DNA from: Bispira polyomma
Taxonomy: Eukaryota
NCBI GenBank assembly: GCA_965649765.1
Contig: OZ287757.1
Coordinates: forward strand, 30,504,001 to 30,568,000
Direction: 5' to 3'
Length of the DNA: 64,000 nt
Both the position numbers and the translations under genes were made by a program. This document shows, one piece after another, positions 4,842 through 26,552 of this stretch. Numbering within the stretch: the first letter of the stretch is position 1; each line of letters begins with the position of its first letter. Under the pieces are notes generated by a model. The model did no database searches. It was not told where the DNA came from and saw only the letters and a list, made by a program, of their open reading frames with translations.

Positions 4842-4847
4842 ACCCGG
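4842..4847 (+). repeat. Left target-site duplication ACCCGG
   Basis: Identical hexamer at 26553-26558; 6-bp TSDs are typical of Polinton integrases. Confidence 0.95.
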
Positions 4848-5102
4848 AGTAGTAGCGTATTGCAGGATTTGAGGTACCCCCCGGAGGAGTCGTGCCACCC
4901 CCATGATCATGATAAGCCCCCCCGAAGATCTTATAAACCACCCCAATGAGTAGAATCGTGATGAGCCCCCCTGAAGATCTTATAAACCACCCCAAAGAGT
5001 AGAATCGCATGCCAACACGCTGTTCACTCTAAAATAAACACCGGTAGAAGTTGAATGAGTACAAACAAGCACTCGAGTGCAGTCACTCTAAAATAAAGAC
5101 CA
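4848..5102 (+). repeat. Left terminal inverted repeat (255 bp)
   Basis: Reverse complement of 26298-26552, with one mismatch seen by eye (GAATCGCATG vs GAATCACATG). Contains two ~45-bp subrepeats with TATAAA. Confidence 0.96.
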
Positions 5103-5199
5103 AACCTGATCTTAGAAAGGATGTACAACAGAATCATCTACCAAATAAACACCAGTAGAAGTTGAATGAGTATAAACAAGCACTCGAGTGCAGTCATTC

Positions 5200-5451
5200 T
5201 AAAATAAAGACCAGACGAGTTATTTATACACAGTTCCCTGTTGTTTTTGTGTTTCAATACTATTTTAAAATCACAAATTGCTGATCCTCTAATTTCTACT
5301 GTCTTCTCTTCATCACTGTCGATTGTGTATTCAGCCATAGTTATTTTCAGTTAAAATCTCGGAGGATCACTTGGAAATAAATACTGAATAAAAGCACAAT
5401 TTCCTTTTGTGTGTCTTTTATGTTCGAAAAAGACGTCTTCAAAAGAATCCC
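5200..5451 (+). repeat. 252-bp direct copy of internal segment 25423-25674 (5' end of the PC4-like gene plus 3' end of the BIR gene)
   Basis: Near-identical sequence in the same orientation; explains ORF 5138-5338, which starts MAEYTIDSDEEK like 25010-25561. Confidence 0.95.
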
Positions 5452-5955
5452 TCAAAGCGGCCTTGTCTGATCTTAGAAAGGATGTACAACAGAATCATCT
5501 ACCAAATAAACTCCTGGTAAGTGGAGTAGCCTTGTCAGCAACTTTAAAAGGTAAAGCACCACCAAGGGTGTATTGGTTGCAATCCTTTTGAATAACCCCT
5601 ACAGGTTGAATTGGTGTTAAGGGGAAAAGATCTCAAAACAAATGGAATATCAAAGATCAGTTAAAATTCCTTTATATTACAAGATTACATGTTAAGATCT
5701 TTTAAAACACTAAAACAACTTATGTTTACGAACACATTTATTTCATGTACTACTACCCTTTAAATCGTTTGGTATTTCTAAGTAAAACTACACTTAGAAA
5801 TCTTAGACGTTCGAAAACACGATTAGATTTTTTCTTGTATAAATACAAACACATTAAACACTTAACACATAATTATACAAATTGTTGTAGAAGCGCACCA
5901 CAGAATAATCATTTCATTTTATTGGCTGGTTCTTAATTCTGAGGGAATTATTTTA

Positions 5956-6006
5956 TTGGTTGGATTTCCAATTGGTGTGTTTGTTAACAAGTTGTAGTTT
6001 ATAAAA
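5956..6006 (+). promoter_or_regulatory. Putative Pol II promoter (CCAAT-type motifs and TATAAAA) of the spliced PC4-like gene
   Basis: ATTGG/CCAAT at ~5956-5975, TATAAAA at 6000-6006, ATG at 6132; matching AATAAA at 8020-8025. Confidence 0.5.
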
Positions 6007-6131
6007 GAACCGGTTAGCTTAAATTATAAGCATCTGAAATAGGAATTTATTACAAATTGTGAGATAGTTTGGATAGATTTAGTGTTTGGATAAATTTTGT
6101 GTTTGGAAAACAACACCTTTTACGAAAAGAA

Positions 6132-7838
6132 ATGGCTTCAATGTAAGTACGACAAAGTTATTTTGTTTAAATTTATTTAATATATAAAATTAGTTATTGT
6201 GATATTATAATTAGAAAATTTAATACTTGAAACTTTATGAAAATGCAACGCAATTATAATATATATTTATATACTACACAACTATAATTTATTCACATCA
6301 ATCAAATTGATAAATACTTAAGTTTTTTTGTTTTTTTTTTGTAATAGAAGTCAAACTTCTTATAGTCGCAAGATTTTATTTATTTTGTCGAGTCACGGAA
6401 AAAACAAAAATGAATAAAAGCTGATTATATTTTTAAAAATTAAACAAGATTTGTATATATATTTATTTAGGAAGAGAAAAGCAGTAACAGAAGAGAAAGA
6501 GTTATTGACTAGGAAGACAAAGAAAACAAACAGGTAAATAACATTATACCCATTTTGTTATTTAGTAGAAATATGTGTAAATATAAGTACTAACAACACT
6601 ATAAAATACAACATATAAATATTTTCACCAAACCTACTAATTAAACTGTGAAAAAATTGTAGTTAAATTTGAGTTTTAGAGCTTCTTGCTGTGAAAACTT
6701 TAGGGAATATATATTATTTAATAATTTTACATAATTTTAAAGAAAAATAACTTTATCACTAAATTAATTTCCTAATTAGAAAACAAATTCTAAACTTTAA
6801 TAGGTATTTTATCATATTTATAATATTCGTATCTTTCTTTTTACAGTTCCTTGTTCAATGACGACATGAGTGATGAAGTTCACAGTGAGCAGGAAGACGG
6901 TAAAGAGGATTCGGACCTAGAGTGGGTGGAACCCTACACACCCCTTTAAACCACCCAAAATCCTAAAAAGTCTAAACAACCCTCAAAACCCCGAAAACCT
7001 AAAATTATTCTTGAATCCGGAGCCTCCAACGTGGTAACCGGCTATCAAGCTTTAGCCACAATGGCTCACGCCATCCAACCTCCAGCATGCAGTGTTGTCA
7101 ATAAACCTCTGCAGAAACAGATGTCTACAACAACAAGAGCAACAAACAACAATACAACCACAAAGTGAGTATATTTAACATCTTAATTATGTGTAATTTT
7201 CTTTAATGATGAAATAAGTAATTCATATTTTTTTGTGAGTATATTCATAATCATGTAGGAAGATAATTGAAAATAATCTTTGTATTTTGGTCTTATTCTA
7301 ATTATAGTTACACCTAATAAAGGAGGAAAGAAGTAAGTATATAAAATTTTGTGTTTTATTAACAACTAATCAATTTAGTTATATATTTTTGTTTTTTTCT
7401 TTTTGCTACAGTTATGCGTTTGTGGAAATCATCAATGATCACTTCACCATGAAAAAAGACACAGACGACGGTGAATACACCATCATGACAGAGTACAGAG
7501 ACAGTGGACTAAGGCTTTACCCCGAACATTGTGAGGGTGTACTCAGGAATTTGGATGTGCTTGTACAATCCGTAAATAGAGTCAAACAAGACCGTCGTGT
7601 GAACCTTAGGGTTGATATAGCAGACGACGGTCTTAAAGCTTGTGTAGATACCAACCACTCCTACATATCGTTTAGGAGGTTTGAGAAGTTGTTCAAAGGA
7701 GGGGATTACCCACTCCCTGGAAAAGGATTTGTAGTACAAAAAGATGAAATAGATGTTTTTGTACAAAACCTCAGAGACTTTTTACAAAATGTAGAAAAAA
7801 CAAAAACAAAACGTACATTTCACAGGAGAAGTGTTTAG
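6132..7838 (+). pseudogene. Four-exon gene (6132-6142, 6471-6533, 6847-7164, 7412-7838; 272 aa) with basic/acidic disordered N-terminus and C-terminal PC4-like ssDNA-binding fold; one in-frame TAA at 6947-6949
   Basis: Three GT-AG introns (donors gtaagt, gtaaat, gtgagt; pyrimidine-rich acceptors), all phase 2. Exons sum to 819 nt. C-terminus YISFRRF...PGKGFVVQKDEIDVF resembles PC4 IDIREY...PGRKGISLNPEQW. Confidence 0.75.
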
Positions 7839-8040
7839 AGACTGTTAGAATCACAATATTGAGAAGAGACTCTTTAGATGGACTTTCTTTAATATAAAAT
7901 TTAGAGTAAAAGAGACTGTTTAAATATTAAGCTAAAAGCGGATTGTTTAAAAGCTTTTAAATATACAAGTTGAGTATCCTTGTTATACTCAGAAATATCA
8001 TTTTATAATGTATTTAACAAATAAATAAATATGAAGATAC

Positions 8041-10154
8041 CTATAAATCAGTTTCATGACTTCCGTAACTCATATTTTCCAAGAAAATTGGTGATGTCTC
8101 CCTCCTATTTCGTTGTCTTTTGTGGTAACATTTGAAGAGACACAAAGTAACTCCAACACTAGTAAGGAATACCATGAAAGACAATCCAGTTGTCAAAGCT
8201 ATAACCCATTTATCTGTCAAAAGAGATATATTGACTGTTACATGTAACATATTATTGCAAGCTCTTACCGTAAAAGTTTGAATCATAAAAAAATTTGAAC
8301 ATTTTCGGTTATCCGAACGTTTTGTTTATTCGAACACTTTAAATATTTCTGGTTAACAGATCCCCAAAATGTTACATCAATCTTCAAATTTCAAAACTAA
8401 TTTGTACATCAAAACATTTTAGGTCAATCAAACATTTTGGTTTAACAACTCTCTAATGCTTGAAGAGACACAAACTTACTCCATCACTATTAAGGAATAC
8501 TACGAAATCCACTTGTTAAAGATCTAACCTATTTATCTGTCAAAACAGAGATGTATATGTCATATGTAAAATATCATTCCAAGGTCACATCATAAAAGTT
8601 AGAATCTTTTGGTTTTCCGAACGTTTTGTTTGACCTAAATTTTTCTCGGAGAACCGATATTCTATTCACAAAACTATGAAAATACATATACTAAAGCTTC
8701 TTTTAGGAACTTCAAAAGGCTTAACCTAATAAAATATTTGGTTAACAGGACAGTTCCAACATTCTATTCGTAAAACTATGAACTAAACAGAATATCTATA
8801 TTGAAGCTGTCTTTAGGAACTTTAACAGGCTTAACCTCATCAAATGTTCGGTTAGCCGAACAGTTTAATATTCTATTTTATAAAACTGCGAACTAAACAG
8901 AATACCTATACTGAGGCTTCTTTTAGGAACTTCATTGGGTGTGGAAGAACTTTTTGTAGAGCCATCCGTTATCAAAGTAAAGACAGAAGTGGTCATCTCA
9001 GTTGTTTTGGACGGTTCTAGAGTGCTTTGGTTTTCTAAAGACAAACACTTATCTTCATAATATTTACCTGCTTTTTATTGAAACACATTTATTGAAACAT
9101 ACATATACCGAACAAGTTCGGATAACCGAATATCCGAACATGTTCGGATAATCCGAAAGTTTGGTTAACCGAATATGTTCGGATAACCGGTTATCCGAAA
9201 TTCGGTTATCCGGAAATTTGATTATCCGAACATGTTCGGATATTCTATTCATAAAACTGCGTACTAAACAGAATACCCATACTGAAGCTTCCTCTAAGAA
9301 CTTAAAAACAAACAGTTATCTTCATAATCTTTATCTGTTTTATTGAAACAAACTCATAACTCAGTGTAATATAAGAAAATTAAGCGAAACTGGTAAAAGT
9401 CTTTCAACAAAAATTATTTCACTTTAAATTTGTTTAGTCACTATTTTTTAAAGATTTACCATGTTCAGTTGAAAGGTTAATGTCAGCAACTGTGGTTGTC
9501 CGAGATGGTTCTACACTTTCTACACTAAGTGATGTAGCAGACAAATCAGTTGTCTTGTCTACCGCACTGGTTGTAGCAGACAAACTGCTTGTCGCAGTCG
9601 ACAAACTAGTTGTTGTGAAAGCAGTCCCAACACTTGATATTTTACTGGTCAAGGCTTCGGTTGAAAGAACTTTTAAAAAGATTAAACAAAACATGCATAC
9701 AATCAATTATTATTCAATATACGTCAAATTTTAACGACAAGACAGAAAGACTTTTATCAATTCAAAACACTTGAATATTTCTATCATATGTACATATTTT
9801 GAAATGGGATTATTAAATGAATAAAAACCAACCTGCGCATCTACTTAATTCCAGTTTAACTTTCATTTGAGATTGTTTTTCATGAACAAGACTACAGTTA
9901 ATATTAACTGTCTGGTCACCCGAGAATAACTCCAAATTCTTGAATTTATCCAGGAAATCCAATTTTGTTACAAAGGAATTAGTAATAAAGAAGTATAACA
10001 ACTTCTCTGGATGAACCACACTAACATCAGGCTCACCAAAAATGTTCAAGCAATTGATTTGCCTTTCAAAACAGAAACATTTGTCATCTTTGAAGCAGTC
10101 ATTACTACAAACTTTTGCAATTAGCAACAACAGAAAAAACACGGAGACATACAT
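8041..10154 (-). CDS. Four-exon type I membrane glycoprotein (10154-9833, 9669-9460, 9034-8906, 8213-8041; 277 aa): signal peptide, LRRNT-like Cys cap, Ser/Thr mucin stalk, TM helix, short tail ending ETDL
   Basis: Three GT-AG introns, all phase 1; the spliced frame is open for 834 nt. It joins ORF-track fragments 9813-10154, 9434-9706 and 8041-8286 plus an unlisted 129-nt exon (ENQSTLEPSKTTEMTTSV...). Confidence 0.8.
9105..9243. repeat. Cluster of short palindromic repeats (TATCCGAACATGTTCGGATA and variants) in intron 2 of the membrane-protein gene
   Basis: Perfect 20-bp palindromes at 9131-9150 and 9223-9242, with degenerate CCGAA/TTCGG units between them. Confidence 0.85.
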
Positions 10155-11476
10155 AGTTGCAAAAATCGTTTTGAATGTGTAATACTTTTAGCTGTTCTGT
10201 TCAACTGAATTTCTAAGGAAGACTGACTCAACTTAGATATTTTTTGTTTTTTCTAGATTTTGGTTAGTAGTGTTTATATTGGCTTGAAGAAAATTTATTA
10301 CACACAATTGCAAAGGAGGGTATGTGTATTTGTGTGTGACTATGCCAACCAAAAAGAGAAAAAACCATTTCCGTGTAAACGATAGACATAAATCAAATAA
10401 ACCAACCTAAAGAAAATAACAAGTTTCGTTACATCTGAAAACCATAAGCACATTTTTTTTTTTTCCTTAGCTTCATACTCTCCTAATGCTACACATAAAT
10501 CAAATAAAGAGAGCTAAAGAAATAACCAGTTTCTTTACATCTGAAAACCATAAAAAAAATTTTCTTGCCTATTAACGTTTATCAAGTCTTTGTTAGATAA
10601 ACGTTAATTATACTAATATAAAGGCTACATCATGAACTATCTGTTATTTCTTTTGGATTTACAAACTATCAAAGTTGATTTATACTGAAAATTAATTCAA
10701 ATGCATAAAGACAGATTTTCTTCACTTCTCCATAAATAGAGTTCATTGAGTTAACTAGGCGTGTATGTTTGTTCTTTAGCTTAAATATTTTAGGGGATAT
10801 TAACCTTGTATCTGATAACAGTTTGAGGTTTATGATACACACTAGTGGATGATTGTATAGCTCTATCCTAGCTCCCCGGGTGCTCTGTGTATGTGTGTGT
10901 ATGGTAAACGTCTGCTTTATTATCTTATAGGTCAAAACCCATATGGGGAGTTGAGATGTGTGTAGGTGTAGTGCAAACATACCACTGCCTGTATACCTTC
11001 AATAAGTAGCTGGCTTCTATACATCATATATATGTGTGTTGTGAGTGAGTGTGTGTGGTATATGTATGTATTTGTTTTGGAGTGGAGATCAGACAATACT
11101 TCTTCACTATTTTCACTTTTTGGTGAAGTATAGAAGACTTTGACTTGTTTAAAGCAAATTATAGTATTACATATATGTGAAAGTGTTTGATTTCTTTTTA
11201 ACCAATTTGTTGATAATGTGAACTGTGTGTGTTTGATATTAGAACACATGGAGATTATACATATGACTGATTCTACTTCTTACATTTCAAAGGATTTGTG
11301 ATTAGTGTCAGTTTGGGAATACATGAAATAAAGGATTACATTCAAAGATAAACTGCAAAAGTAAGTGTATATTTTTGTTATTAAAACTATGTAAAATAAT
11401 CAACTTATTGTTTTGCAAAATAATTTAAAAGACCGCTTGTATCTGAAAAGTCTGTAATAACCAATTTACTTTCCAG

Positions 11477-11626
11477 ATGGCAGAGAATTACGCTAATCTT
11501 ACTACTGTTGAAAGACAAGAACTTAGAGCTCAACCAAATGTAGATATGATACAGCAATGGGCTAAGACAAGATCCATCAACAATCACCCTGAGGTTCTTG
11601 AAAAGATCATTGAAAAATATGAAGAT
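11477..11626 (+). CDS. Putative first coding exon (50 aa, MAENYANL...EKYED) of the PolB polyprotein
   Basis: Preceded by acceptor tttccag directly before the ATG. Ends at a phase-0 donor (GAT|gtaagt) that matches the phase-0 acceptor ttgttccag|TTA at 14302/14303. An upstream non-coding donor gtaagt sits at 11361. Confidence 0.65.
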
Positions 11627-11937
11627 GTAAGTAACTATCTTTGCTTTTATTTCAAATTTAACATTTATGTGTTTTAGTTGTATTGTTTGATTTTAGTGAA
11701 CTCTCTAAATTACTGATTTATTATCTTAAATTGCACAAAGTATTCACATTAAATTTAGGAAAATGATAACTTCTTGAATCAAAACTTCTTGAAATTTAGG
11801 AAAATTCTAAGTACAGAATTAAAAAAATCACAAATTCTTTAATCAAAACTTCTTGAAATTTAAGAAAATTACAAGTACAGAATTAAAAAAATCTTCAAAT
11901 CACCAACTTAAATAAATTTGAATATACACCTTAGTGT

Positions 11938-12590
11938 ATGGAGATTCATACTCAGTCTAATTAGTCTTTACATACTCAGCCTAATTAATCTTTAAAAGAA
12001 AATTGTTAATTACTAGGAAACTGTCCATATCCAAGAAAAATGTAAAAGCTTACATTGAAAACACAAAAAATCTCAAAAATTCTGTTAAATTAAAATTTAC
12101 AGTGGATAAAAAATTCCCCGGTGTAATTCGTTTTTGAAATAAACTTTCAAAGGAATTACACCTCGGAATTTTATCTCGGAAAGAAACATGCTCATCCACT
12201 TGATAATATTTCAGATTAGTGGCTTCTACTATTCAATTTAGTTGTCAGTCTGTTTGACATGGAGATTCATACTCAGTCTAATTAGTCTTTACATACTCAG
12301 TCTAATTAGTCTTTAAAAGAAAATTGTTAATTACTAGGAAAATGTTAGAGAAACTGTCCATATCCAAGAAAAATGTAAAAGCTTACATTGAAAACACAAA
12401 AAATCTCAAAAATTCTGTTAAATTAAAATTTACAGTGGATAAAAAATTCCTCGGTGTAATTCATTTTTGAAATAAACTTTCAAAGGAATTACACCTCGGA
12501 ATTTTATCTCGGAAAGAAACATGCTCATCCACTTGATAATATTTCAGATTAGTGGGCTTTCTACTGTTCAATTTAGTTGTCAGTCTGTTT
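11938..12590. repeat. Tandem duplication of ~320-335 bp
   Basis: ATGGAGATTCATACTCAGTCTAATTAG at 11938 and 12259, each followed by near-identical sequence to GTTGTCAGTCTGTTTGAC. Confidence 0.9.
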
Positions 12591-12954
12591 GACGGCATCG
12601 TAAGGTTATTAGCTTCACTGTCTGTAGTAGTAGTAGTAGTGGTAGTCTTCTTCATCTTTAAACTGAAAATATAAAAAAAGAATAAATAATTACTTTTAAA
12701 ATATCCAAATTTTAGATAAGTTATTTTACAATAACAAACTTCTTTTTCGAGTCTATTATGTTGGAAAATGTTAACTGATAAATATGTAAACTCCTGGAGA
12801 AAGCTAAAGTTGATTATATTTACTTAACACTTACACCCATGCCAAATTGACCAAATATAGGAAGGTGAAGTATCAGTTAAACTTTAAAGTATGAGTTAAA
12901 ATTTAACATTCCTGTTAATAAGTCATATTTAGCATCAGTAATTTATTCATACTT

Positions 12955-14097
12955 TTAAACCACTGACCACTCTTCATGGTTAACGGCGTCTCTTGAAGTT
13001 ATACTTTCAAAGGGTTGTAGTACTTCTCGGTTCTTGGTTGTCGGTTTTGTTATTGGTCTTGAAGTGTTGTACTGAGCTGGTGTTCTTAACTCTGGTACGA
13101 TGGATACTCGGGCAGGTTCATCGGAATTAAACAAAACGGATCTCCTCGCTCGCATTCGAGCTTGGATTCTACCAATCCTGAAATGAAATAATAAAACAAA
13201 TATTTACTGGTGTTCTTAACTCGGGTATGATAGATACTAGGGCAGGTTCATCGGAATCAAACAAAAGAGATCTCCTCGCTCGCATTCAAGCTTGGATTCT
13301 ACCAATCCTGAAATGAAATAATAAAACAAATATTTACTGGTGTTCTTAACTCGGGTACGATAGATACTAGGGCTGGTTCATCGGAATCAAACAAAAGAGA
13401 TCTCCTCGCTCGCATTCAAGCTTGGATTCCACCAATCCAGAAATGAAATAATAAAACAAATATTTACTTAGAATTGTTTACGCAAATTCTATCAATCAGA
13501 ATATAAAATAATGAAACAAGTAACTACTTATGGTTATTGTGTGAAATATTACCTCTCTTCGTCTCGTCCTGTAGTGTAATGCCCCTTCCAACACAGAAGA
13601 TTACGCGTTTTCACATACTTCAGAGTCCTTCGAGTTCCTTCTATGATCAAACCTATGTATGTTAGAACGGCTATAGCAATAATAATCCAATTTGGTATGT
13701 TTATTTCATTAGAAATATCGATATCTGAATTAACCAAACTGTCGTCTTTGTTTTCCGTAGAGTCGTTATTTGTGTTATGTTTGCTGTCAACCGAATCGTC
13801 TTGGCAACCGCCTATCATTTCTATATGGGTATAGTCGGGACAGTTTAATGTAACACTATCCACAAATCTCACACTTTGTAAGTTCGGAAAAGCAAATAAA
13901 ACTTTTTTTACATCCACAATAGAGTCTGTGAACACGGCAGTTAAATATCTGACTGAGATAGAGAAAACCGTTCTTGAGTCTATGTTTTCACATTTTATAC
14001 TCGCTAAATCACACCCACAACCCGTGGGGCAATTCAACACTCCCATCACAACACAGCTTATAAACAACAAAACATAAATATTCCTTTGGAAAACCAT
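12955..14097 (-). CDS. Spliced type I membrane protein (exons 14097-13553 and 13177-12955; 255 aa): signal peptide, LRRNT-like cap, acidic stalk, TM helix, long cytoplasmic tail
   Basis: CPTGCGCDLASIKC cap; TM WIIIAIAVLTYIGLII; phase-2 donor GAG AG|gtaat joins acceptor catttcag|G ATT GGT in frame with ORF 12955-13155. Confidence 0.75.
13076..13468. repeat. Three tandem 130-bp copies of an intron-end/exon-start unit
   Basis: Acceptor positions at 13178, 13308 and 13438 (the last mutated CAG>CTG). The two distal copies carry a CGA>TGA stop. Confidence 0.9.
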
Positions 14098-14302
14098 CGT
14101 TAAACTAGATAAAATCAGTATATTGTTTTTATTTTTCCTCTAAACTTTTCTGCATAAACAGATCAAATTTACCTCCAAAATGTTTCACTCTAAAAGTTTT
14201 CTGCGTTTACTTTAACCGTTTAATAAAACAGTTTTGCGAAAAGTTAGGTGATTATTGAAATTGTTTGTCTGATTTTTGTTGTTTTATTTTTCATTGTTCC
14301 AG

Positions 14303-17300
14303 TTAAGACAGCACAAGAGAACTGAGACAATTCCAGGAAAAGAAAAAGCTATTGATACTTGCAACACGCTAGTTGAGGATCTGAAAGCAAAGAAAGTGTC
14401 AAAACAAGAGTGGTCCTGCAAAAAGTGTGGGATAAAGTTTCAACAACTACAAAAATGGATAAAACATAGAAAGAGTTGTGAAGGATTATTGTGTACTCCT
14501 AAACTGAAAATTCAGTGTGTTAATTGCAAAAAATTCTTTTCTCAAAAGTCGAATCTAAAAAGACATCAGCTAAAATGTGACCTTACAGATGGTAAAGAGC
14601 CTACCTTTAAATGTGTGAAATGTACGAAGGTGTATATATTGAAATCTAATTATTTGAAACATCTAAAGAGTTGTGGGTTTTTAAATTCTCTCACTACAAA
14701 AAAAGTTTGTTGTAGTATTTGCAAGGAAAAATTTTTCAGTAGTAAGGATTTATACTCCCATAGATTAAATCAACACGGTGGTGGAGAGCAAAATATTGAC
14801 GATACTGGTAATTCAGACAGATTTCAGTTAAATTCTCCGCCTTGGTTGAATGAAGCTGGTGAAAATATAAATCCAGAGTTAGAAAAAATTTATAAAACAA
14901 ATGAATCACACATATTCGCTCCTCACCAAACAGATAGTGTTGTGAAAAAATATAATTTTCCTACTGAAAATTTGAAAGGAGGGGTTGAAGAAATTATGAA
15001 ACATATAGAAAAAATATTTCAAAATCAAAACTGAGGATTCAAAATTAATATTAATTTAGATTTTATTCTGAAGAACAAGAAATCAGGTAAATACAGATAT
15101 TACATTCCTTATGCTAGTTCTTATCTATTTCCGAAACCTTACATCATTTCCAGACATACCAATTTGAGAGTTTTGAAAAACAAACTCAAGAAATTAAACC
15201 CCAGTGAATATATTTTGAATAACAGACCCAACAGTCGGTATATTCCAGAATATATAACCAATATAAATTTTGATGTGAGCTTAATGGATTACGTATTAGG
15301 TAATCCTTCAGACTTCCCAGAATTTGTGAAAAACTGTAGAAGCGTTTTTACATTTTTAAAGCCTCCAAAAACAGGAAAAACATACACTGACAATATGTGT
15401 ATTTTTCGTTGTCTTGCATTTCACGAGATAAAAAATAGAAAGAGTTTAGACACTTTAACTAGAAGTAAGTTTTTTGAATGGCTTGATTATAAATCTTACA
15501 AAGAACCAAAACGTTTTAAAGGGGTGACATTAGAAGATATTCCCGATTTAGAAAACTGTTTTCAAATCAATATTTCTGTTTTCCAGCTTTTAGAAAATTC
15601 ATGTGTAATCACACATTATAATTCTAGAGGAACTTTTGACAAATCCATAGATTTAGATATGCAAAATCATCATCTATCATATGTCAATAATTTGAGCTTG
15701 TACGCCAAAAAGTATCAATGTCAAGCATAATGTTTTTCAAGAACTTGAAAAGTATAACATTTTTGTCTCAGTAGAAGACAGATTTTGTCCTTATTTTATC
15801 ACTTTTGACTTTGAGTCAATTCTTCAAAAGAAAAGTCAAGTCAAAACTCAGAAGTAACAAAATTAATGTGGAGAGAAAAACACATTCCAATATCAGTCGG
15901 TGTAGGGTCTAATGTTGAAAATTTTGAGGAAGGAAAATGTTTTGTAGATTTTAATATGGATAAATTATTAGCAAAAATGGTTGAATATATGGAACAGATT
16001 TCAAACAAAGTCAAGACCTTACAAATGTTTAAATACCATTCATGCTTTCAAGAACTAGATAGACTTTTAAATGAGTTACAATCACTTGAAACACAAAAAG
16101 ACATTGAACAAAATAGTGAAAATTTTGGAAGTGAAGAAGATGAAGTTCCTTCTGTTTCGTTTCAAAAAAGATTCAAAAAGCACAACTGTTTCGACAAAGC
16201 TATTGATAATTTAATAAAAACTAATAATCTTCAAGTAGAATACAATAATTATAGTGATGTCAGTGAATCTGAAGACGATATTTTTGAGAATGAAGAACAA
16301 GAGAATTTCCTTGAAAATATCTTTCATGAAAAACCTCAAGCTTGTGAAGAAAACATAGCTCACAAATTGTGCTCTAGAACTCGTTTCTTAAAAACTGTGA
16401 GAAAAAAAATCCAAACTTTGAAAGAGAGACTAGAATCTTATTGTGAATGCACACCAGTCTTAGGCTTTAATTCTTCAAATTATGATCTTAATTTAGTCAA
16501 ATCTAAACTGTGTAAACATTTGAAACTTGATGATACACAGAACAATTCTTTTACAGTGAAAAGAAATAATGCTTATTTAGTTATAGCAACCAATACTTTG
16601 AAATTTTTAGATATCAGTCATTATATAGCCCCTGGATTTTCTTACTCTCAATTTTTAAAAAGTTATAATGTAACAGAGCAAAAAGGATACTTTTGTTATC
16701 AATATCTCTCAAAACCCGAAGTTCTTGAAGAAACAAATTTACCTCCTTATGAAGCCTTTTACAGTGATTTGAAATCTTGTAATGTTTTAGAACGTGACTT
16801 GTTAGATTGGTATAAAACAAACAACATACAGTTAGTACAGCAAGATTTAGAATTCAACTCGTATGATAATCCCTCTAAATATGTGAATTCATCTATTTCT
16901 TATTTAAATTTGACAACTGAAAAATGTTTAAAACTTTGTTGTTTGTGTGAAAAGATCCAATGTGTGTGTAATAGTAGACCTCTTACTGGTTTTGATAATT
17001 ATTTAGATTTATTAAAAATTTGGAAAGTGAATGATATGAAATCAGTTGAAGATTTATTAGTCTGGTATAATTTGAAAGATATCAACCCCTTTACAGAAGC
17101 AGTTGAAAATTTACAAAAGTATTACAAAGAAAATAATATTGATCTTTTTAAAGATACAATTTCAGTGCCTGGAGTAGCTAGACAAATGCTATTTAAATCA
17201 AAAGATGCTAATTTTCAGTTATTTGATCGTCAAAATGCAGACCTTTACAGAAAAATAAAGCAATCCATTTGTGGGGGTCCTTCTATAGTGTTTACAAGAG

Positions 17301-19592
17301 CAATGAAAGAAGGACAGAAATTAAGGGGAGGTCATACAAAATGCGAAACTATCGTCGGCTATGACGCGAATAGTCTTTATCCAACCTCGTTACAAAATAA
17401 TATGCCCTGTGGAACTGTAGTAAGGAGACATGAAAGCACTGGTTATAAACCAGAAGTTCAAACAAAATATTTAGACATGTTTATTTGGATGGATCGGGTA
17501 TCAGAACTGAGACAGATAAAAATTTTACACAGATTAAATAGTGGGAAAGAACATTATGTGATGGGTTTCAGAGTTGATGGTGTATTTGGTAATGAAATAT
17601 TTGAATTTTTAGGAGATTATTTTCATGCTTGTCCTAAATGCACTAACAAATTAAAGTGTAACAAACCAAAATCTTGGTTAGTTAAACAAGAACAAAGATA
17701 CCAGAGAACTATTCTAAGAAAAGAATATTTAGAAAGTTTAGGATATACTGTAAATGAAATTTGGGAGTGTGAATATAAAGAAAAGTTTAAAAATTGTGTT
17801 CAACACATTCAAGAAAGATATTTACCCAAATATTACAGTTCTCATAAAAACGGGTTGTCATTAACAAAAGTATTAAAAGACATTAAAAACGGTGAATTAT
17901 TTGGTTGTGCCAAAGTTGATATTGAGACTCCTTCTAAATGGACTGAAGATTTTGTTCAGTCAATCTCACCTCAGGAATATTACTCTGAATTTAGCCCTAT
18001 ATTTTGCACCACTGACGTACCTATGAGTGTTATTGGTGAACATATGACAAATCACATTCAAAATAATGATTTATCTATGGAGAGTAGGCGATTATTAGTA
18101 GGCGGGTTGAAAGCAAATAAGATTATGCTTGCTACACCTTTACTACAATGGTATTTAAAACACGGAATTTTAATAACTAGAATTTATGAAGTCGTAGAGT
18201 TTTCACCCATACCTTGTTTCGCTCAATTTGTTTCTGACGTCACAGAAAGTCATAGGATCGGAGACAAATCTCCTCATTTAGCTTTAATAGGGCAAACTGC
18301 AAAACTTTTGAATAATTCCGCTTATGGATCATGTCTTATGAATAAGGAAAACTTTATGAACATCAAATATGTGAAAGGTGACTCCAGCGAAAATTGAAAT
18401 AAATAAACCAGAATTTCGAAAAGCTACTTTGTTAGATGAAAGATACTATGAGATAGAAGCAGCCAAACGCAGAATTTGTTTAGATGTACCAATTCAAATA
18501 GGGTTCTTTATTTTAAATTATGCAAAATTACGTATGTTAGAATTTTACTATGATAATTTGTGTGAATACATTCATAGAAATAGATTTGAGTGTATACAAA
18601 TGGACACTGATAGTGTGTATTTTGCAATAGCTGGAAAGTCTCTTGAAGACGTAGTTTACAAGCATAAAAAACATGAATTTCAAAGAAAAATCAAAAATAA
18701 TTGTGGTGATTTTGAATTAAAAGCTGATAAAGACCACTATTTCCCCCGAGATTGCTGTACTAAGCATAAACAATACGATTTAAGAACACCGGGACTTTTC
18801 AAAAAAGAAAGTTCGGGAAAAGAAATGATTGCTTTATGTTCTAAAACATATGTACTAGCTGAAGAAATTGGATTCAAACTCTCCTGTAAAGGTGTTAATA
18901 AGAAATCGGTTAAAGATCCTGTCAAAATATTTCAAGACGTTTTGATAACACAAAATGTCCAAACAGCTTTAAATAAAGGTTTTAGAGCTAAAGACAATTC
19001 GATGTTTACATATTCTCAAGAAAGAATAGGTTTTAATTATTTTTACTGTAAACGCAGAGTTTGTGATGACGGAATACACACAGTACCTTTAGATTTGGTT
19101 TTGTCACCGTGGCCAAATTATGAAAGGCATGTGTTTTTCAGAGATTTTACTAACCCTTTATGTATTTCTTACAAATTTCCTTGTAGATATAATGAGAGAA
19201 CATTTGAATCAATAGAACATTTTATGTATTTTGCTTTTGCTCGTTTTCACAAAGAAAAATCTATTGCACTTTTAATTCAAAAATCATTCCACAAAACCAA
19301 AATTCTACAATTACTGAAGAATATAAAGATAAGTTTTATTTGGTTTGATAAACTGAGAGAGCTTTTACAACTGAGTCTAAAGGAAAAATATGAACATTGC
19401 AATTTGTTTAGACAAGCACTTGATAATATTTTGTTTCAAGAAATTATCTTTGCTGACAAGGATAAGTATTTAGGTTGTGGAATGGAATGTAGAATAGCCG
19501 AACTAACCGATAGTGCAAAATACCCTGGTCAAAATGTACTGGGCGAACTGTTGATAGAGTTAAAAAATACAAAAAACACACACAATGTTTAG
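14303..19592 (+). pseudogene. polB: Protein-primed family B DNA polymerase polyprotein (zinc fingers, terminal-protein region, vOTU-like protease, exonuclease, polymerase with VSR-like insertion, C-terminal NADAR-like domain); disrupted
   Basis: Motifs FDFES (~15800), GFNSSNYD, GGPSIVF, YDANSLYP, KLLNNSAYG, MDTDS, TPGLFK. In-frame TGA at 15032-15034; frame breaks at ~15730, ~15855 and ~18380. Confidence 0.95.
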
Positions 19593-19957: not shown

Positions 19958-20401
19958 TTAACCTGTGTGTTTATAAAAGAGATAAACCAACTGATCATTG
20001 TACAACAAATCTTTTGAAAACATATTTAAAATGTTTGACATGGAAAAACCTCTAACTCTAAAATAACAAAAAAACAAACAATATTGACCACACAAATTTG
20101 AAACATAGCTTTGACACCTCTTGACATTGAATTTGTACTTATGGCTTTGTAAGCTCATATAAGACTTTAAATAGAGATCTGGAAATTTACCAATAGGATC
20201 AAAATATTCAGTGACTTCATCATTGTGATTGTAAAGCACAACCCAATGACTTCCTGCTTTCTCACTTGTGTCTAGATTGACTATGTAAAATCTAGGTTTT
20301 TTTGATTGTAAAGGTAATAAATCCTTTGGTAAGACTCCTCCATAACTTTCTGAAATGTAGGGGTCCTTTAACATATACCGCTCCAATTGAAATGTATTCA
20401 T
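19958..20401 (-). CDS. Adenain-like (C5 family) cysteine maturation protease
   Basis: IVNLD...GSHWV, EYFDPIG and Q...SNLCGQYC give the His/Asp/Gln/Cys catalytic set; adjacent to the MCP. Confidence 0.95.
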   Translation of the reverse strand: MNTFQLERYMLKDPYISESYGGVLPKDLLPLQSKKPRFYIVNLDTSEKAGSHWVVLYNHNDEVTEYFDPIGKFPDLYLKSYMSLQSHKYKFNVKRCQSYVSNLCGQYCLFFCYFRVRGFSMSNILNMFSKDLLYNDQLVYLFYKHTG

Positions 20402-21678
20402 TATTGAATTTTGATATTTCTAGCTTTATCAACCAATACCATTCCTGGAAAAATTGAATAAGCAATCACCATTAAAGATGTACTAGTGGCAGAACCGAAC
20501 TTGAGCTGTAACCTTGTGTGTCCTTTTTTAAGTTTTCCCATTAACTCATTGTCTGTTTCTCCTTGAATGTCAAAAACGAAAAGACCATACCCATTTGAAT
20601 AATCAGCTCTACTAATAAAATTTCCAGCGTGGTGTGGGTATTTATTTGAGAATAAAGTAAGGTATGACGAGACATAATCTCCTGTTGAAAAATTAGGTGT
20701 TAGAGCTTGCTGAGGTACACTTTGTCCATCTACACTTAGTTCTAAGTAATTAACACTCTCATTAACAAAATTGTAAGGGTTTAATAAAAAATCACCAGTG
20801 TATGCGTCTGTTTTTACAATACCTAAGATAAGTTTTGAGGGTACTTCACCATGGAAAATATCATCTGATGAAAAGGTGCTTACACCTTGAGGAATAACAA
20901 AAGTTTTTATGTTGGATTTCCAAATAGGGTAAAGAGCTGGAGCGTATGTTAAAGCTTCATTATGAGCTAAGATTATAGAATCACTGACTTTCACATGACA
21001 AGCTTTAAAAACAGCTTCTGTTATTGTTACTTTGTAAGCTTCTAAATCTCTTGTCATCATTACAAATTTATCAGAAGAAGGGAATAATTTAATTATTATT
21101 TTAACCCCGTTTAAAATTGGTCTTTCTTGCTGAGATATATCCATATGAATAGGTTCTTCTAAAGTGACTTCTTTACCGGAAGCTGTAAAAGATGTCCTAG
21201 CTGTCAAACCAGGGTTATTTCCAGGTGGGGTTGCATCCATAACGCCTGAATCCTTGTAATATAATTCACTTTGAAGTTGAGATTCTTTTACTTCCATTCC
21301 GTATTTTAAAAGCACATCAAAAATTGATTTATAAGGGTAGTTTACTCCTACATCCGGAGAAACAACTTTATCTTGAAGCATGACGTCGACTTGACGAAAA
21401 AGAGAGTGTAAACTTAAATTTACTAAACCCACCGCATTATCTGCTGCAATCGGAGTTCCATCCGATTTAAGAATTTTTGCTTTTATTTTTAATCGGGATT
21501 TATTTAAATCAATATATTCAGCACTGGTGCCTGGTATTCGAAATTCTATAGTAGAACCATGTGAAATAGTAGAAGTGGATTGGAATTCTATATATTGGAT
21601 TTCATCTACAGCCGCTTCTACATAAGGAGCTTGAAAAAGTGCTAATTTAGACGAATAAGACAGTTCCTGATCACTCAT
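20401..21678 (-). CDS. Major capsid protein (double jelly-roll; Polinton PY / 'hexon')
   Basis: Intact 425 aa with Polinton MCP hallmarks (IEFRIPG...EYIDL, LHSLFRQVDV, YPYKS, ESQLQSELYYKD, NPYNF, GYGLFVFD). Confidence 0.93.
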   Translation of the reverse strand: MSDQELSYSSKLALFQAPYVEAAVDEIQYIEFQSTSTISHGSTIEFRIPGTSAEYIDLNKSRLKIKAKILKSDGTPIAADNAVGLVNLSLHSLFRQVDVMLQDKVVSPDVGVNYPYKSIFDVLLKYGMEVKESQLQSELYYKDSGVMDATPPGNNPGLTARTSFTASGKEVTLEEPIHMDISQQERPILNGVKIIIKLFPSSDKFVMMTRDLEAYKVTITEAVFKACHVKVSDSIILAHNEALTYAPALYPIWKSNIKTFVIPQGVSTFSSDDIFHGEVPSKLILGIVKTDAYTGDFLLNPYNFVNESVNYLELSVDGQSVPQQALTPNFSTGDYVSSYLTLFSNKYPHHAGNFISRADYSNGYGLFVFDIQGETDNELMGKLKKGHTRLQLKFGSATSTSLMVIAYSIFPGMVLVDKARNIKIQ

Positions 21679-22424: not shown

Positions 22425-23554
22425 GAAAATTTTTTTATTTCATTTTCATCTATCCAAGTATCAAATTTAGGTCCCCAACCTTTCCAACGAACAAGTAGGC
22501 TTATTTTACCTTTAATTTTTTTTTCTGAACTATCTTTTCTATATCATACTGAGTGTCTTGACTTACATTAACCTTTTGAAGTTCAGAGGTAGAAAACTTA
22601 TCAATTATAGGCTCGTTATGGAAATCTTTTACTTCATATTTCTGAATACCTTGATTTAAGTCTCTTGTGGATATAATGAATAATTCGTCAGTCCATTTTT
22701 GATCTGATTCTTTGTTATAGACACTTTGTAGTTTTCTCAAGCGAACAATATCACCTATTTTGAACTTGTATAAAGGGGTATTTCTTTGTGATTTAGGTAA
22801 AGTGGTTTTTTTTCTTGAATTTGAGTATTTTAGGTAGTTTTTTTTCATACTGGATTTTCCATAAAATAGGGTTTGCAACTTCAAGAGCTTCTTTAGGAGA
22901 CATATTAATTGTACTATGATATGTTTTATTATAACTATCAGTTAAGTTTTGTAAAACATCAATCCATTTCCTAGTTTTGTTATATTCCATATATCTAGCT
23001 ATTTTCATTTTTAAGGTACGAATAACTCGTTCCGCATAATTAGCTTTGGAGTGTTCTGAAGTTACAATGTGTTTCACATTATTTTCTTTGATGAATTTAT
23101 CACCTAATCCTAAGTACTCTGTCCCACGGTCGCTTCTCAGGACTAATGGTTTGTTTTCTTTAAAAACAAGTTTCAACGCATCCACCATTTCTTTTGAAGT
23201 CAATGTTTTAAGTGGTACCGTGTACAAATAATGAGATAAAATATCTATAAACACGGCTATGTATTTGTAACCTTCGTTTTGTGAAGCAAACTTTTCATAA
23301 TGGGCTGTATCTGTGTCTTGCATATAGCCCTTAAAGGGTACTATAACTTTTGGTCTCTTGAATTTTCTGATAACTTTCCTATATAGAGTGTAGCTATTTT
23401 GTTTACTTAACCAATTTTGAATAAATCCTTTAGAAATATCAGACCTTTCCTTTTTAACTAAATTATAAAACTTTTGTAACCCTGCAAACGAACTTGGGTT
23501 TTATGGATTAAAATACATTTTTTGCAGATAATCTTCTTTCTCAGAATCACCCAT
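22421..23554 (-). pseudogene. Retroviral-like (rve) integrase with C-terminal chromodomain; disrupted
   Basis: Starts MGDSEKEDYLQKMYFNP*NPSSFAG (stop at 23501-23503). DDE residues in QDTD, SDRGTE and AERVIRTLK. Frameshifts near A-runs at ~22840 and ~22520. Ends LVRWKGWGPKFDTWIDE. Confidence 0.95.
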
Positions 23555-24203: not shown

Positions 24204-24800
24204 TCATTGATATACTATTATAGGTAATTCAGTTGGAAAAATATTAGTTCTTAATCTGTAAGCTTCGTTACTTTTAGGGGATAAATCAAGAATCAAATAA
24301 CCGTAGGGATTTGTGAGAGCGTCAATATAAGCTTGTTTCAACAAACTTTTCATACCTATTTGTTGTGATAAAATATTTACTTGTTGAAGATTTCTGGGGT
24401 TCTTTAACAAAACGGTATAAGCTGTATTCAAAGTAAGAGTTCTGGAACATTTACCTTGATAAAACAAATTTTGATTTATGTAAATAACTGTAATATTGTT
24501 GTGGTGACTTATTTGGGTAAATAACTTTTCAGCTTCTTTGCTGTTGGCTACTTCGTGTTGAAGGTCATCTAAGCATATTATATTATGATTTGAGTCAAAT
24601 ATAGTTCTTATTTTTTCCAAATTTGGCAAACCTTCCACAAATTCTATGTTTAAATTTTTTTCTATGTCATCAAATATAGGCTGCCAAACAGAATAACAAT
24701 AAAGAATTTTTGTAGGTGGATTTTCAAACATAATATCTTTTGCTTTTAACAATTTATACAACCAAGTAGTTTTACCACTACCAGTCATTCCTGATATCAT
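24204..24800 (-). CDS. A32/FtsK-like genome packaging ATPase
   Basis: Walker A GMTGSGKT, Walker B ICLDDLQ, SHHNNITVIYINQNLF, PYGYLILDL, RLRTNIFP. The frame extends upstream (EVVKFECPSTW) to an ATA at ~24836 that may be a mutated start. Confidence 0.95.
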   Translation of the reverse strand: MISGMTGSGKTTWLYKLLKAKDIMFENPPTKILYCYSVWQPIFDDIEKNLNIEFVEGLPNLEKIRTIFDSNHNIICLDDLQHEVANSKEAEKLFTQISHHNNITVIYINQNLFYQGKCSRTLTLNTAYTVLLKNPRNLQQVNILSQQIGMKSLLKQAYIDALTNPYGYLILDLSPKSNEAYRLRTNIFPTELPIIVYQ

Positions 24801-25009
24801 CCATGTTGAAGGACACTCAAATTTAACAACTTCTATGTTAACACGTGTAAACCAAAATAATTAATGAAGAGAATTACTTTATTAGGAAATAATATATATA
24901 TAACTATAAACATACAAAACCAAAACTACGATATTCATTTAATCAAGTATTTATACAAACTAAAATCACACAAATCATACCAAGGAAAAGTCTGAGCGTA
25001 TTTTAAAGT

Positions 25010-25561: not shown

Positions 25562-25573
25562 AGTTATTTTCAG

Positions 25574-26017
25574 TTAAAATCTCGGAGGATCACTTGGAAA
25601 TAAATACTGAATAAAAGCACAATTTCCTTTTGTGTGTCTTTTATGTTCGAAAAAGACGTCTTCAAAAGAATCCCATTGATGTAAAATCACCTTACACCAT
25701 GCGCATTTACAGCTGTCTCCTATTCCTGTGTAAAGAAATCCAGCTTTAGCTAATTGTTCAGGACGGACTGGGTGACATTTAGGCCATGTCTTAAAAGTTT
25801 CAATTCTCTTGTCATATTTATAAAAATATTCTTTCCCAAAGGAAAATTCTGGGCATGTATCCCTTTGACCTCCTAAAAATATAGAAGATCCTCTGCTTTC
25901 TTTCTCCCAACAAGATTTAGAAGAAGAAGCTGGTGTACAGAGTGAAAATCCACTGGTAACAGCTTTATTACAAAATAACCCGTCGCTGGTTGAGTCTGAA
26001 ACGTCTGTTCTTTCCAT
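25574..26017 (-). CDS. Single-BIR inhibitor-of-apoptosis-like protein (no RING)
   Basis: RIETFKTWP...LAKAGFLYTGIGDSCKCAWC...W......EHKRH...CAFI is a complete CCHC BIR signature. Confidence 0.95.
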   Translation of the reverse strand: MERTDVSDSTSDGLFCNKAVTSGFSLCTPASSSKSCWEKESRGSSIFLGGQRDTCPEFSFGKEYFYKYDKRIETFKTWPKCHPVRPEQLAKAGFLYTGIGDSCKCAWCKVILHQWDSFEDVFFEHKRHTKGNCAFIQYLFPSDPPRF

Positions 26018-26075: not shown

Positions 26076-26297
26076 ATTAGAAACAAGCACAAAAAAAAAA
26101 AAATCCTAAGTATATTATTGGTTAGTTTTTAACCAATTAAATTATAGCAATTATAATTATATAATAAAATTTATTATATTCAAAATGTTGATTTTGATGC
26201 GTGATTCATTAAACCTAAATAAAGGAAAATACATATCTCAATAGACTAAAATCCTTGGGTTGCTTGTTTGTACTCATTCAACCTTTACATCTTTGTC

Positions 26298-26552
26298 TGG
26301 TCTTTATTTTAGAGTGACTGCACTCGAGTGCTTGTTTGTACTCATTCAACTTCTACCGGTGTTTATTTTAGAGTGAACAGCGTGTTGGCATGTGATTCTA
26401 CTCTTTGGGGTGGTTTATAAGATCTTCAGGGGGGCTCATCACGATTCTACTCATTGGGGTGGTTTATAAGATCTTCGGGGGGGCTTATCATGATCATGGG
26501 GGTGGCACGACTCCTCCGGGGGGTACCTCAAATCCTGCAATACGCTACTACT
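26298..26552 (-). repeat. Right terminal inverted repeat (255 bp)
   Basis: Reverse complement of 4848-5102; followed by TSD ACCCGG at 26553-26558. Confidence 0.96.

What the first reader, a model, noticed from the sequence alone, without database searches (positions are those of the whole stretch)
6132..14302. An 8-kb intron-rich accessory arm of the virus that the ORF track misses
Seen: three multi-exon genes plus a PolB leader exon, with at least eight phase-consistent GT-AG introns, occupy the left arm, while the right-arm core genes are intronless and tightly overlapping. Known: Polintons are usually annotated as simple ORFs. Inference: the element has an adenovirus-like organisation with a spliced host-interaction region (E3-like in role) that standard annotation would score as junk.
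Basis: partly seen in the sequence, partly recalled or inferred. Interest (0 to 1): 0.85.

Follow-up and report, generated by a model that had tools for sequence, protein, structure and literature searches.

The report
Intron-bearing cargo arm of a Maverick
The flagged 8 kb is the accessory arm of an integrated, slightly decayed Maverick/Polinton virus-like element. It probably holds a few cell-style spliced genes, two of them for membrane glycoproteins, an arrangement already described for Mavericks of nematodes. No transcript or related copy could be checked here.

Summary
The window holds a 21.7-kb Maverick/Polinton (4848-26552). It has 258-nt inverted ends with 2 mismatches, a 6-bp target duplication (ACCCGG) and AGTAGT...ACTACT termini.

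The left 9.2 kb is about 26% candidate coding, against 85% ORF cover on the right. Open frames of 90 codons or more are eight times commoner there than in shuffles.

I could model:
- a four-exon gene (10154-8041, minus strand) for signal peptide, Cys domain, Ser/Thr-rich stalk, membrane anchor and tail;
- a weakly similar single-ORF membrane protein (14097-13549);
- a five- to six-exon orphan gene (6132-7838), carrying one in-frame stop and one phase misfit;
- a 50-codon ATG exon (11477-11626) that may be the PolB N-terminus, spliced to an acceptor at 14302.

GT-AG phase consistency proves little: each junction tested has 42-140 compatible pairs, and splice-like motifs are not enriched. No accessory protein has a detectable homologue. 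The E3 likeness is an analogy only. PolB itself is broken.

Intron-bearing cargo next to a Maverick end is already published for nematodes.

The parts
4842..4847 (.). Left target-site duplication, ACCCGG
   Evidence: Identical hexamer at 26553-26558.
4848..5105 (.). Left terminal inverted repeat, starting AGTAGT
   Evidence: 258 nt with 2 mismatches to 26295-26552. The end motif is the one reported for vertebrate Mavericks (PMC8097293).
5106..5514 (.). Rearranged inner left end
   Evidence: It holds an extra inner-TIR copy at 5143-5216 and a 48-nt direct repeat at 5106-5153 / 5467-5514. Positions 5200-5451 are a 99.2% direct copy of right-arm 25423-25674.
6132..7838 (+). Gene 1, an orphan multi-exon gene
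   Evidence: Model exons are 6132-6142, 6471-6533, block 6847-7164, 7308-7332 and 7412-7838. As it stands, the middle part has one in-frame stop and one phase misfit. Donors are GTAAGT, GTAAAT, GTGAGT and GTAAGT; strong acceptors lie at 6846 and 7411. Exons are 40.9% GC and introns 19.1%. A TATAAA lies at 6000. The last exon (141 aa) has no real homologue among 1.84 billion representatives and no Pfam or PDB hit. Its AF2 model has pLDDT 50.
9833..10154 (-). Gene B exon 1: signal peptide plus a Cys-framed domain of about 65 aa
   Evidence: ATG at 10154; hydrophobic N-terminus; 7 Cys; donor after 9833; exit phase 1. TATAAA on the minus strand at 10278.
9460..9669 (-). Gene B exon 2: Ser/Thr-rich stalk
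   Evidence: 69 whole codons, 48% Ser+Thr, phase 1 in and out, no stop.
8906..9034 (-). Gene B exon 3: second Ser/Thr-rich piece
   Evidence: 43% Ser+Thr, phase 1 in and out. Its 3' end and the start of the next intron recur as 110-bp repeats.
8041..8213 (-). Gene B exon 4: membrane anchor, basic tail and stop
   Evidence: Hydropathy window above 1.6 over residues 2-29, followed by a run of basic residues. A degenerate duplicate of this exon lies at 8460-8552.
8304..9230 (.). Cluster of a palindromic 14-mer (TTCGGWTAWCCGAA) in gene B introns 2-3
   Evidence: 9 matches with up to 2 mismatches, all in this stretch, against 0.32 expected in the whole window.
10672..11279 (-). Two overlapping open frames judged non-coding (CA-rich low complexity)
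   Evidence: Codon scores are -0.25 and -0.06 per codon, and the translations are not protein-like.
11361..11476 (+). Candidate 5'-UTR intron ahead of the leader exon
   Evidence: GTAAGT donor at 11361 (score 3.6). A pyrimidine-rich AG sits directly before the ATG. The acceptor is weak in my scoring.
11477..11626 (+). Candidate PolB leader exon: ATG plus 50 codons, with a phase-0 GTAAGT donor
   Evidence: It is the only sizeable ATG exon with a phase-0 donor on the plus strand of the arm. It resembles residues 35-71 of two 1474-aa PolB relatives (pairwise E 6e-4 and 2e-4), colinear with the PolB body. Its codon score is positive.
11755..12593 (.). Tandem repeats: 64 nt x2 and 333 nt x2
12461..12663 (-). 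Optional 3' exon of gene A, or a separate 64-aa ORF
   Evidence: A polypyrimidine-AG precedes it. It is phase-compatible with the GTAATA that overlaps the gene A stop (read directly). It overlaps the 333-nt repeat. Support is weak.
13077..13466 (.). 130-nt tandem repeat x3, exon-like in its signals but closed in all frames
13549..14097 (-). Gene A: complete 182-aa ORF for a type I membrane protein
   Evidence: Signal-like N-terminus, 8 Cys, membrane span at about 134-156 and a basic tail. It shows weak similarity to gene B exon 1: 29% over 62 aa, pairwise E 0.064 (not significant), with four Cys aligned. No homologue was found.
14303..19592 (+). Body of the zinc-finger / protein-primed PolB / NADAR gene, broken
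   Evidence: Relatives of 1650-1755 aa carry all three parts in one ORF. Here I count at least one premature stop and three frame changes, and there is no ATG in the first 238 codons.
19958..20401 (-). Adenain-like protease ORF
   Evidence: Peptidase_C5 at 18.7 bits, below the 21.3-bit cut-off.
20401..21678 (-). 425-aa ORF, possibly the capsid protein by position only
   Evidence: No Pfam, NCBIfam or PDB hit.
22796..23500 (-). Retrovirus-type integrase core
   Evidence: rve at 34.8-35.4 bits, above the 32.6-bit cut-off.
24207..24860 (-). P-loop ATPase ORF
   Evidence: Weak P-loop family hits only.
25574..26017 (-). BIR (inhibitor-of-apoptosis) domain ORF
   Evidence: PF00653, E 3.9e-18.
26295..26552 (.). 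Right terminal inverted repeat
26553..26558 (.). Right target-site duplication, ACCCGG

Best explanation
An endogenous Maverick/Polinton (adintovirus-like) element integrated as one 21.7-kb unit and has decayed slightly since. Its left 9.2 kb is an accessory (cargo) arm built like cellular DNA: short GC-richer exons, AT-rich introns and tandem repeats.

The arm most likely carries:
(a) a four-exon gene for a mucin-like type I membrane glycoprotein;
(b) a possibly paralogous one-exon membrane protein gene;
(c) a five- to six-exon orphan gene whose product has a basic then acidic N-terminal part and a 141-aa C-terminal domain;
(d) probably the 5' exons of the PolB gene. The second membrane gene would then sit antisense inside a 2.7-kb PolB intron.

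Shown: element bounds, excess of open frames, compositional contrast, membrane-protein architecture, and breaks in PolB. Inferred: every splice junction, expression, and any role at the cell surface.
For: - TIRs, TSD and end motif enclose the arm, so it moved with the element.
- 11 open frames of 90 codons or more, against 1.3 in shuffles; 0 of 300 shuffles reached 11.
- Coding share is 26% in the arm against 85% ORF cover on the right.
- Exon GC is 36-41%, intron GC 19-29% and core ORF GC 31%.
- The four same-strand, ordered open frames of gene B encode signal peptide with Cys domain, two Ser/Thr-rich pieces (48% and 43%), and anchor with basic tail. All three introns are phase 1 and the total is 834 nt without a stop.
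- Gene A has the same architecture in one ORF and aligns weakly with gene B, with the cysteines matched.
- Gene 1 has GTAAGT-class donors and strong acceptors at the ends of its open stretches.
- PolB lacks an ATG for 238 codons, although relatives align from a few codons after the acceptor at 14302.
- The only suitable upstream ATG exon resembles the N-terminus of two longer relatives, in colinear order.
- Published precedent exists: intron-bearing cargo beside a Maverick TIR (10.1101/2022.07.12.499685) and accessory regions flanking the core (PMC8097293).
Against: - There is no transcript evidence, and no related copy was examined.
- None of the accessory proteins has a detectable homologue or family. 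Structure models are unusable, with pLDDT 50 and 35.
- Splice-like motifs are not enriched, and phase-compatible GT/AG pairs abound.
- By a generic matrix, several chosen sites are weak and not top-ranked.
- Codon usage of genes A and B does not match that of the core genes.
- Gene 1 does not read through as it stands.
- The exon/intron GC contrast is partly circular, because open frames in AT-rich DNA are GC-biased.
- The leader similarity is weak once the 176 proteins compared are allowed for. The literature also warns of false N-terminal fragments separated by long 'introns' (PMC8097293).
Confidence: 0.6

Rival explanations
1. The arm is a virus-evolved, adenovirus-E3-like host-interaction region. 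Its membrane glycoproteins are made from alternatively spliced transcripts and act on host defence at the cell surface.
For: - Two predicted type I membrane proteins, one with a mucin-like stalk.
- Several alternative phase-compatible exon chains exist in gene 1.
- A BIR/IAP gene elsewhere in the element shows that it carries host-directed genes. IAP and Bcl2 homologues are reported in adintoviruses (PMC8502044).
Against: - No similarity to any adenovirus E3 family or any other family.
- The position differs: between an inverted end and PolB, and on the strand opposite to PolB.
- Exon GC and codon usage differ from the core genes, which suits captured cellular genes better.
- Function cannot be read from these sequences.
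Confidence: 0.15
2. The arm is non-coding filler: decayed remnants, tandem repeats and low complexity. The exon chains are chance assemblies of open frames with ubiquitous GT and AG.
For: - 29% of the arm is repeats.
- Two of the five long ORFs are plainly low complexity.
- Motif counts equal those of shuffles, and there are 42-140 compatible pairs per junction.
- No homologues anywhere.
Against: - The open-frame excess was never reached in 300 shuffles.
- A 182-aa ORF has signal peptide, cysteines, anchor and basic tail.
- Four ordered frames together give the same architecture.
- Decay at the rate seen in the TIRs (2 of 258 mismatches) cannot turn long ORFs into 74% non-coding DNA.
Confidence: 0.12
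3. On PolB only. There is no leader exon. PolB once started at an internal Met that this decayed copy has lost, and 11477-11626 belongs to another small gene or to none.
For: - ORFs of close relatives begin with Met at places matching the first 50 codons or so of the body.
- This copy has other breaks.
- Core genes of Mavericks are reported as intronless (PMC8097293; 10.1101/2022.07.12.499685).
- The leader similarity is weak.
Against: - The first Met of the relatives falls at different places, as expected if ORF callers simply took the first internal Met.
- A good acceptor sits just where homology begins.
- The leader and body match two relatives in colinear order.
Confidence: 0.4

Closest known systems
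Cargo regions of nematode Mavericks, which carry wosp protease and krma kinase genes (Widen et al., 10.1101/2022.07.12.499685)
   Same: Intronless, compact core genes, plus a region between one TIR and the core that holds genes with introns, differs in GC and lacks conservation.
   Different: - Here the arm is 9 kb rather than 2-5 kb.
- It abuts PolB rather than the integrase.
- Only the exons, not the arm as a whole, are GC-richer.
- The cargo is membrane glycoproteins and an orphan gene, with no host homologue found.
- Horizontal transfer was not examined.
Accessory regions of vertebrate Mavericks (Barreat and Katzourakis, PMC8097293)
   Same: [quoted passage not shown]
   Different: Those accessory genes are described as plain ORFs, and no introns were seen in intact elements. 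Here the arm needs splicing to make sense, and the copy is not intact.
Adintovirus accessory genes upstream of PolB ('Oncoid' genes; IAP and Bcl2 homologues) (Starrett et al., PMC8502044)
   Same: Accessory genes lie upstream of PolB, and an IAP-type gene is present in the element.
   Different: That paper does not mention splicing. I saw no LXCXE-type motif in the gene 1 exons by eye. The membrane proteins have no counterpart named there.
Adenovirus E3 region (compared from my own knowledge, not fetched)
   Same: A dispensable-looking block that encodes small type I membrane glycoproteins and is expressed by splicing.
   Different: No sequence similarity to any family was found, so none to E3. 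The genomic position and strand logic differ. Function and transcript structure are unknown here.

Membership tests
Maverick/Polinton (adintovirus-like) element | Terminal inverted repeats | tested here: met
   258 nt with 2 mismatches.
Maverick/Polinton (adintovirus-like) element | 6-bp target-site duplication and AGT-type end motif | tested here: met
   ACCCGG on both sides; termini AGTAGT...ACTACT (motif per PMC8097293).
Maverick/Polinton (adintovirus-like) element | [quoted passage not shown] | tested here: met
   405 homologues, many carrying PF03175; the best is E 9e-295 at 54% identity. The gene is broken in this copy.
Maverick/Polinton (adintovirus-like) element | Retrovirus-type integrase | tested here: met
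   rve at 35 bits, above the cut-off. Whether the gene is whole was not examined.
Maverick/Polinton (adintovirus-like) element | Adenain-type protease, packaging ATPase and jelly-roll capsid proteins | tested here: inconclusive
   Protease at 18.7 bits, below the cut-off. ATPase gives only weak P-loop hits. The 425-aa ORF has no hit.
Maverick cargo region of the nematode type | Lies between one TIR and the core genes | tested here: met
Maverick cargo region of the nematode type | Genes with introns | tested here: inconclusive
   Coherent sequence-only models exist. There are no transcripts and no conservation data.
Maverick cargo region of the nematode type | Higher GC than the core | tested here: inconclusive
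   Exons are 36-41% GC against 31% for core ORFs. The arm as a whole is 31.1% against 30.4%.
Maverick cargo region of the nematode type | Cargo taken from the host | tested here: inconclusive
   No homologue of any cargo protein was found, in host or elsewhere.
Adenovirus E3 region | Proteins belonging to E3 families | tested here: not met
   No significant Pfam hit of any kind for genes A and B.
Adenovirus E3 region | Type I membrane glycoproteins | tested here: met
   Hydropathy, cysteines, Ser/Thr content and sequons. This is prediction only.
Adenovirus E3 region | Alternative splicing from one promoter, and an immune-modulating role | not testable with these tools
   Needs transcript and functional data.
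LRR-capped (LRRNT-type) cell-surface proteins | N-terminal Cys-cap pattern followed by a leucine-rich repeat | tested here: inconclusive
   The pattern is seen by eye in the A/B alignment. Pfam gave no hit. The best PDB match includes a variable lymphocyte receptor N-terminus at E 0.39, which is not significant.

The most novel reading that the evidence does not exclude
A core replication gene of a Maverick is itself spliced. PolB would start in leader exons 2.7 kb upstream of its body, and an antisense membrane-protein gene would be nested in the intron. That would contradict the published view that Maverick core genes are intronless, and it would recall how adenovirus polymerase messages are built.
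Probability: 0.45. Interest if true: 0.6.

Novelty: new member of a known kind. Interest (0 to 1): 0.4.

Why it matters
If the models hold, ORF-only annotation of animal Mavericks misses up to two fifths of an element and all of its surface-protein cargo. The published 'intronless core plus intron-bearing cargo' layout would then extend beyond nematodes. A spliced PolB would change how start sites and 'intactness' of such elements are scored in genome surveys.

Tried and rejected
- **Alternative genetic code.** With TGA as the only stop, or TAA/TAG as the only stops, no longer coherent genes appear in the arm. The core genes read in the standard code.
- **Family and structure searches.** Pfam, NCBIfam and PDB searches of every large open frame and model exon gave nothing significant.
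- **Large protein searches.** Gene A, the A/B alignment and the last exon of gene 1 gave nothing. Two repeat-protein hits for the last exon were spurious.
- **AF2 models.** Both were too poor to search with.
- **Exact look-up of the window's own ORFs.** None is in the collection.
- **Codon-usage scoring.** Trained on the core genes, it separates core ORFs well but gives near-zero or negative scores for genes A and B.
- **Motif enrichment and bacterial signals.** The splice-motif enrichment test was negative. The bacterial promoter and terminator scan is irrelevant here.
- **RNA genes.** Rfam and tRNA scans found none.
- **The 130-nt repeats as exons.** Rejected, because all frames are closed.
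- **The open frames at 10672-11279.** Rejected as low complexity.
- **An extra weak-site intron in gene 1.** It would step over the in-frame stop and exists among 48 paths. I did not adopt it, because it is picked only by that property.
- **Nested transposon insertion.** No internal TIR or TSD pair was found.

Full report
**What the window holds.** The window is AT-rich (about 30-33% GC) and has no N. Two 258-nt inverted repeats with 2 mismatches lie at 4848-5105 and 26295-26552. They are flanked by the same hexamer, ACCCGG, and the termini read AGTAGT...ACTACT. A 6-bp duplication and this end motif are what is reported for Mavericks (PMC8097293).

Inside the element I found:
- a protein-primed PolB: 405 homologues, the best at 54% identity, many carrying PF03175; the named ones come from bivalves and a sea cucumber;
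- an rve integrase;
- a weak adenain-like ORF;
- a P-loop ATPase;
- a NADAR-domain ORF;
- a BIR/IAP ORF.

So this is an integrated Maverick/Polinton of an invertebrate animal. The flanks are retrotransposon debris. I treated the element as a virus-like element of animals throughout.

**State of the copy.** Close relatives carry zinc fingers, PolB and NADAR as one ORF of 1650-1755 aa. In this copy I count at least one premature stop and three frame changes in that gene, and no ATG in the first 238 codons of its open frame. The copy is therefore mildly decayed, in keeping with about 1% divergence between the inverted ends. I give no places for the breaks.

**Is the arm more than chance?** The arm (5106-14302) has five ORFs of 100 aa or more, two of which are CA-rich low complexity.

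Signals in favour of coding:
- It holds 11 open frames of 90 codons or more, against 1.3 expected; 0 of 300 shuffles reached 11.
- Candidate exons are 36-41% GC and the stretches between them 19-29%. This contrast is partly circular, because open frames in AT-rich DNA are GC-biased.

Signals that carry no weight:
- Strong donor- and acceptor-like motifs are no commoner than in shuffles.
- Between any two neighbouring open frames of gene B there are 110-435 GT/AG pairs, of which 42-140 are phase-compatible.
- 'Phase-consistent GT-AG' is therefore nearly free. The case rests on what the exons encode.

**Gene B (minus strand, 10154-8041).** Four ordered open frames give four parts:
- a signal peptide plus a Cys-framed domain;
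- a 48% Ser/Thr piece;
- a 43% Ser/Thr piece;
- a membrane anchor with a basic tail.

With the outermost plausible sites, all three introns are phase 1. The exons sum to 834 nt with no stop. The introns hold duplicated exon/intron modules, a degenerate copy of the anchor exon, and a cluster of a palindromic 14-mer. This is the best-supported spliced gene.

**Gene A (minus strand, 14097-13549).** This is a complete 182-aa ORF with the same plan: signal peptide, eight cysteines, anchor and basic tail. It aligns weakly with gene B exon 1 (29% over 62 aa, pairwise E 0.064), with four cysteines matched. It needs no intron. A phase-compatible exon at 12663-12461 is optional and weakly supported.

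**Gene 1 (plus strand, 6132-7838).** It has a TATAAA 132 nt upstream, an 11-nt first coding exon and GTAAGT-class donors. Strong acceptors lie at 6846 and 7411. Introns 1 and 2 and the last intron fit. The middle block has one in-frame stop and one phase misfit as it stands. An extra weak-site intron would avoid both, but I did not adopt it, because nothing but that property picks it.

**PolB leader.**
- The acceptor at 14302 lies four codons before homology to a 1474-aa relative begins.
- The only sizeable plus-strand ATG exon with a phase-0 donor is 11477-11626.
- That exon resembles residues 35-71 of two relatives, at pairwise E 6e-4 and 2e-4. This is weak after allowing for 176 proteins compared, but the order is colinear with the body.
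- I rate the leader at about 55-60%.
- The literature reports core genes as intronless and warns of false N-terminal fragments separated by long 'introns' (PMC8097293).

**Searches for relatives of the cargo.** Each exon was searched by reference, one at a time. Split codons were only checked for stops. Nothing significant was found in Pfam, NCBIfam, PDB, the 5.8-billion-protein search or the 1.84-billion-representative search. Both structure models were unusable. The closest PolB relatives are only about 50% identical, so fast-evolving cargo may simply be out of reach.

**Comparison with what is known.**
- Nematode Mavericks are described as intronless core genes plus a 2-5 kb cargo region with intron-bearing genes beside a TIR (10.1101/2022.07.12.499685).
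- Vertebrate Mavericks have accessory regions on both flanks (PMC8097293).
- Adintoviruses carry accessory genes upstream of PolB, as well as IAP homologues (PMC8502044).
- The E3 likeness is an analogy of protein type only.

**Left out.** Conservation of splice sites and frames therefore remains untested.

**Verdict.** This is a real and reasonably well-read feature, a new member of a published kind. The splice junctions are unproven, and the spliced-PolB possibility is open and moderately interesting.

Noticed in passing
43435-57513: A macrosatellite with a 3,779-bp unit repeated about 3.7 times. Copies are 99.7-99.8% identical, and each holds an internal sub-repeat of about 980 bp at 91%. 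No ORF of 120 aa or more.
   Followed up: partly
8304-9230: Nine copies of the palindromic 14-mer TTCGGWTAWCCGAA (up to 2 mismatches), found nowhere else in the window; 0.32 expected. All lie in the introns of gene B. They could be a protein-binding array or a small satellite.
   Followed up: partly
5106-5514 and 25423-25674: The inner left end is rearranged. It holds a 252-nt direct copy (99.2%) of a right-arm stretch that spans the end of the BIR ORF and the start of the next ORF. It also holds a second copy of the innermost 74 nt of the TIR and a 48-nt direct repeat.
   Followed up: partly
14303-19592: In relatives, C2H2 zinc fingers, PolB and a NADAR domain form one ORF of 1650-1755 aa. 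A NADAR domain fused to a protein-primed polymerase is unusual and unexplained.
   Followed up: partly
25574-26017 (minus strand): A 147-aa ORF with a clear BIR (inhibitor-of-apoptosis) domain next to the right TIR, E 3.9e-18.
   Followed up: no
13077-13466: A 130-nt tandem repeat, three copies at 92-94% identity. Each unit looks like a short intron end plus an exon plus a donor, yet all frames are closed. It may be a decayed, amplified exon module.
   Followed up: partly
522-1091, 31874-33255, 36559-37692: The flanks hold retrotransposon pieces (integrase zinc-binding domain, gag, aspartic protease) and a 378-codon open frame with a weak S64/Nal1-type peptidase match.
   Followed up: no
22501-23500 (minus strand): The integrase core ORF overlaps a second 127-aa ORF in another frame by about 90 nt. 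Whether the integrase is whole was not examined.
   Followed up: no
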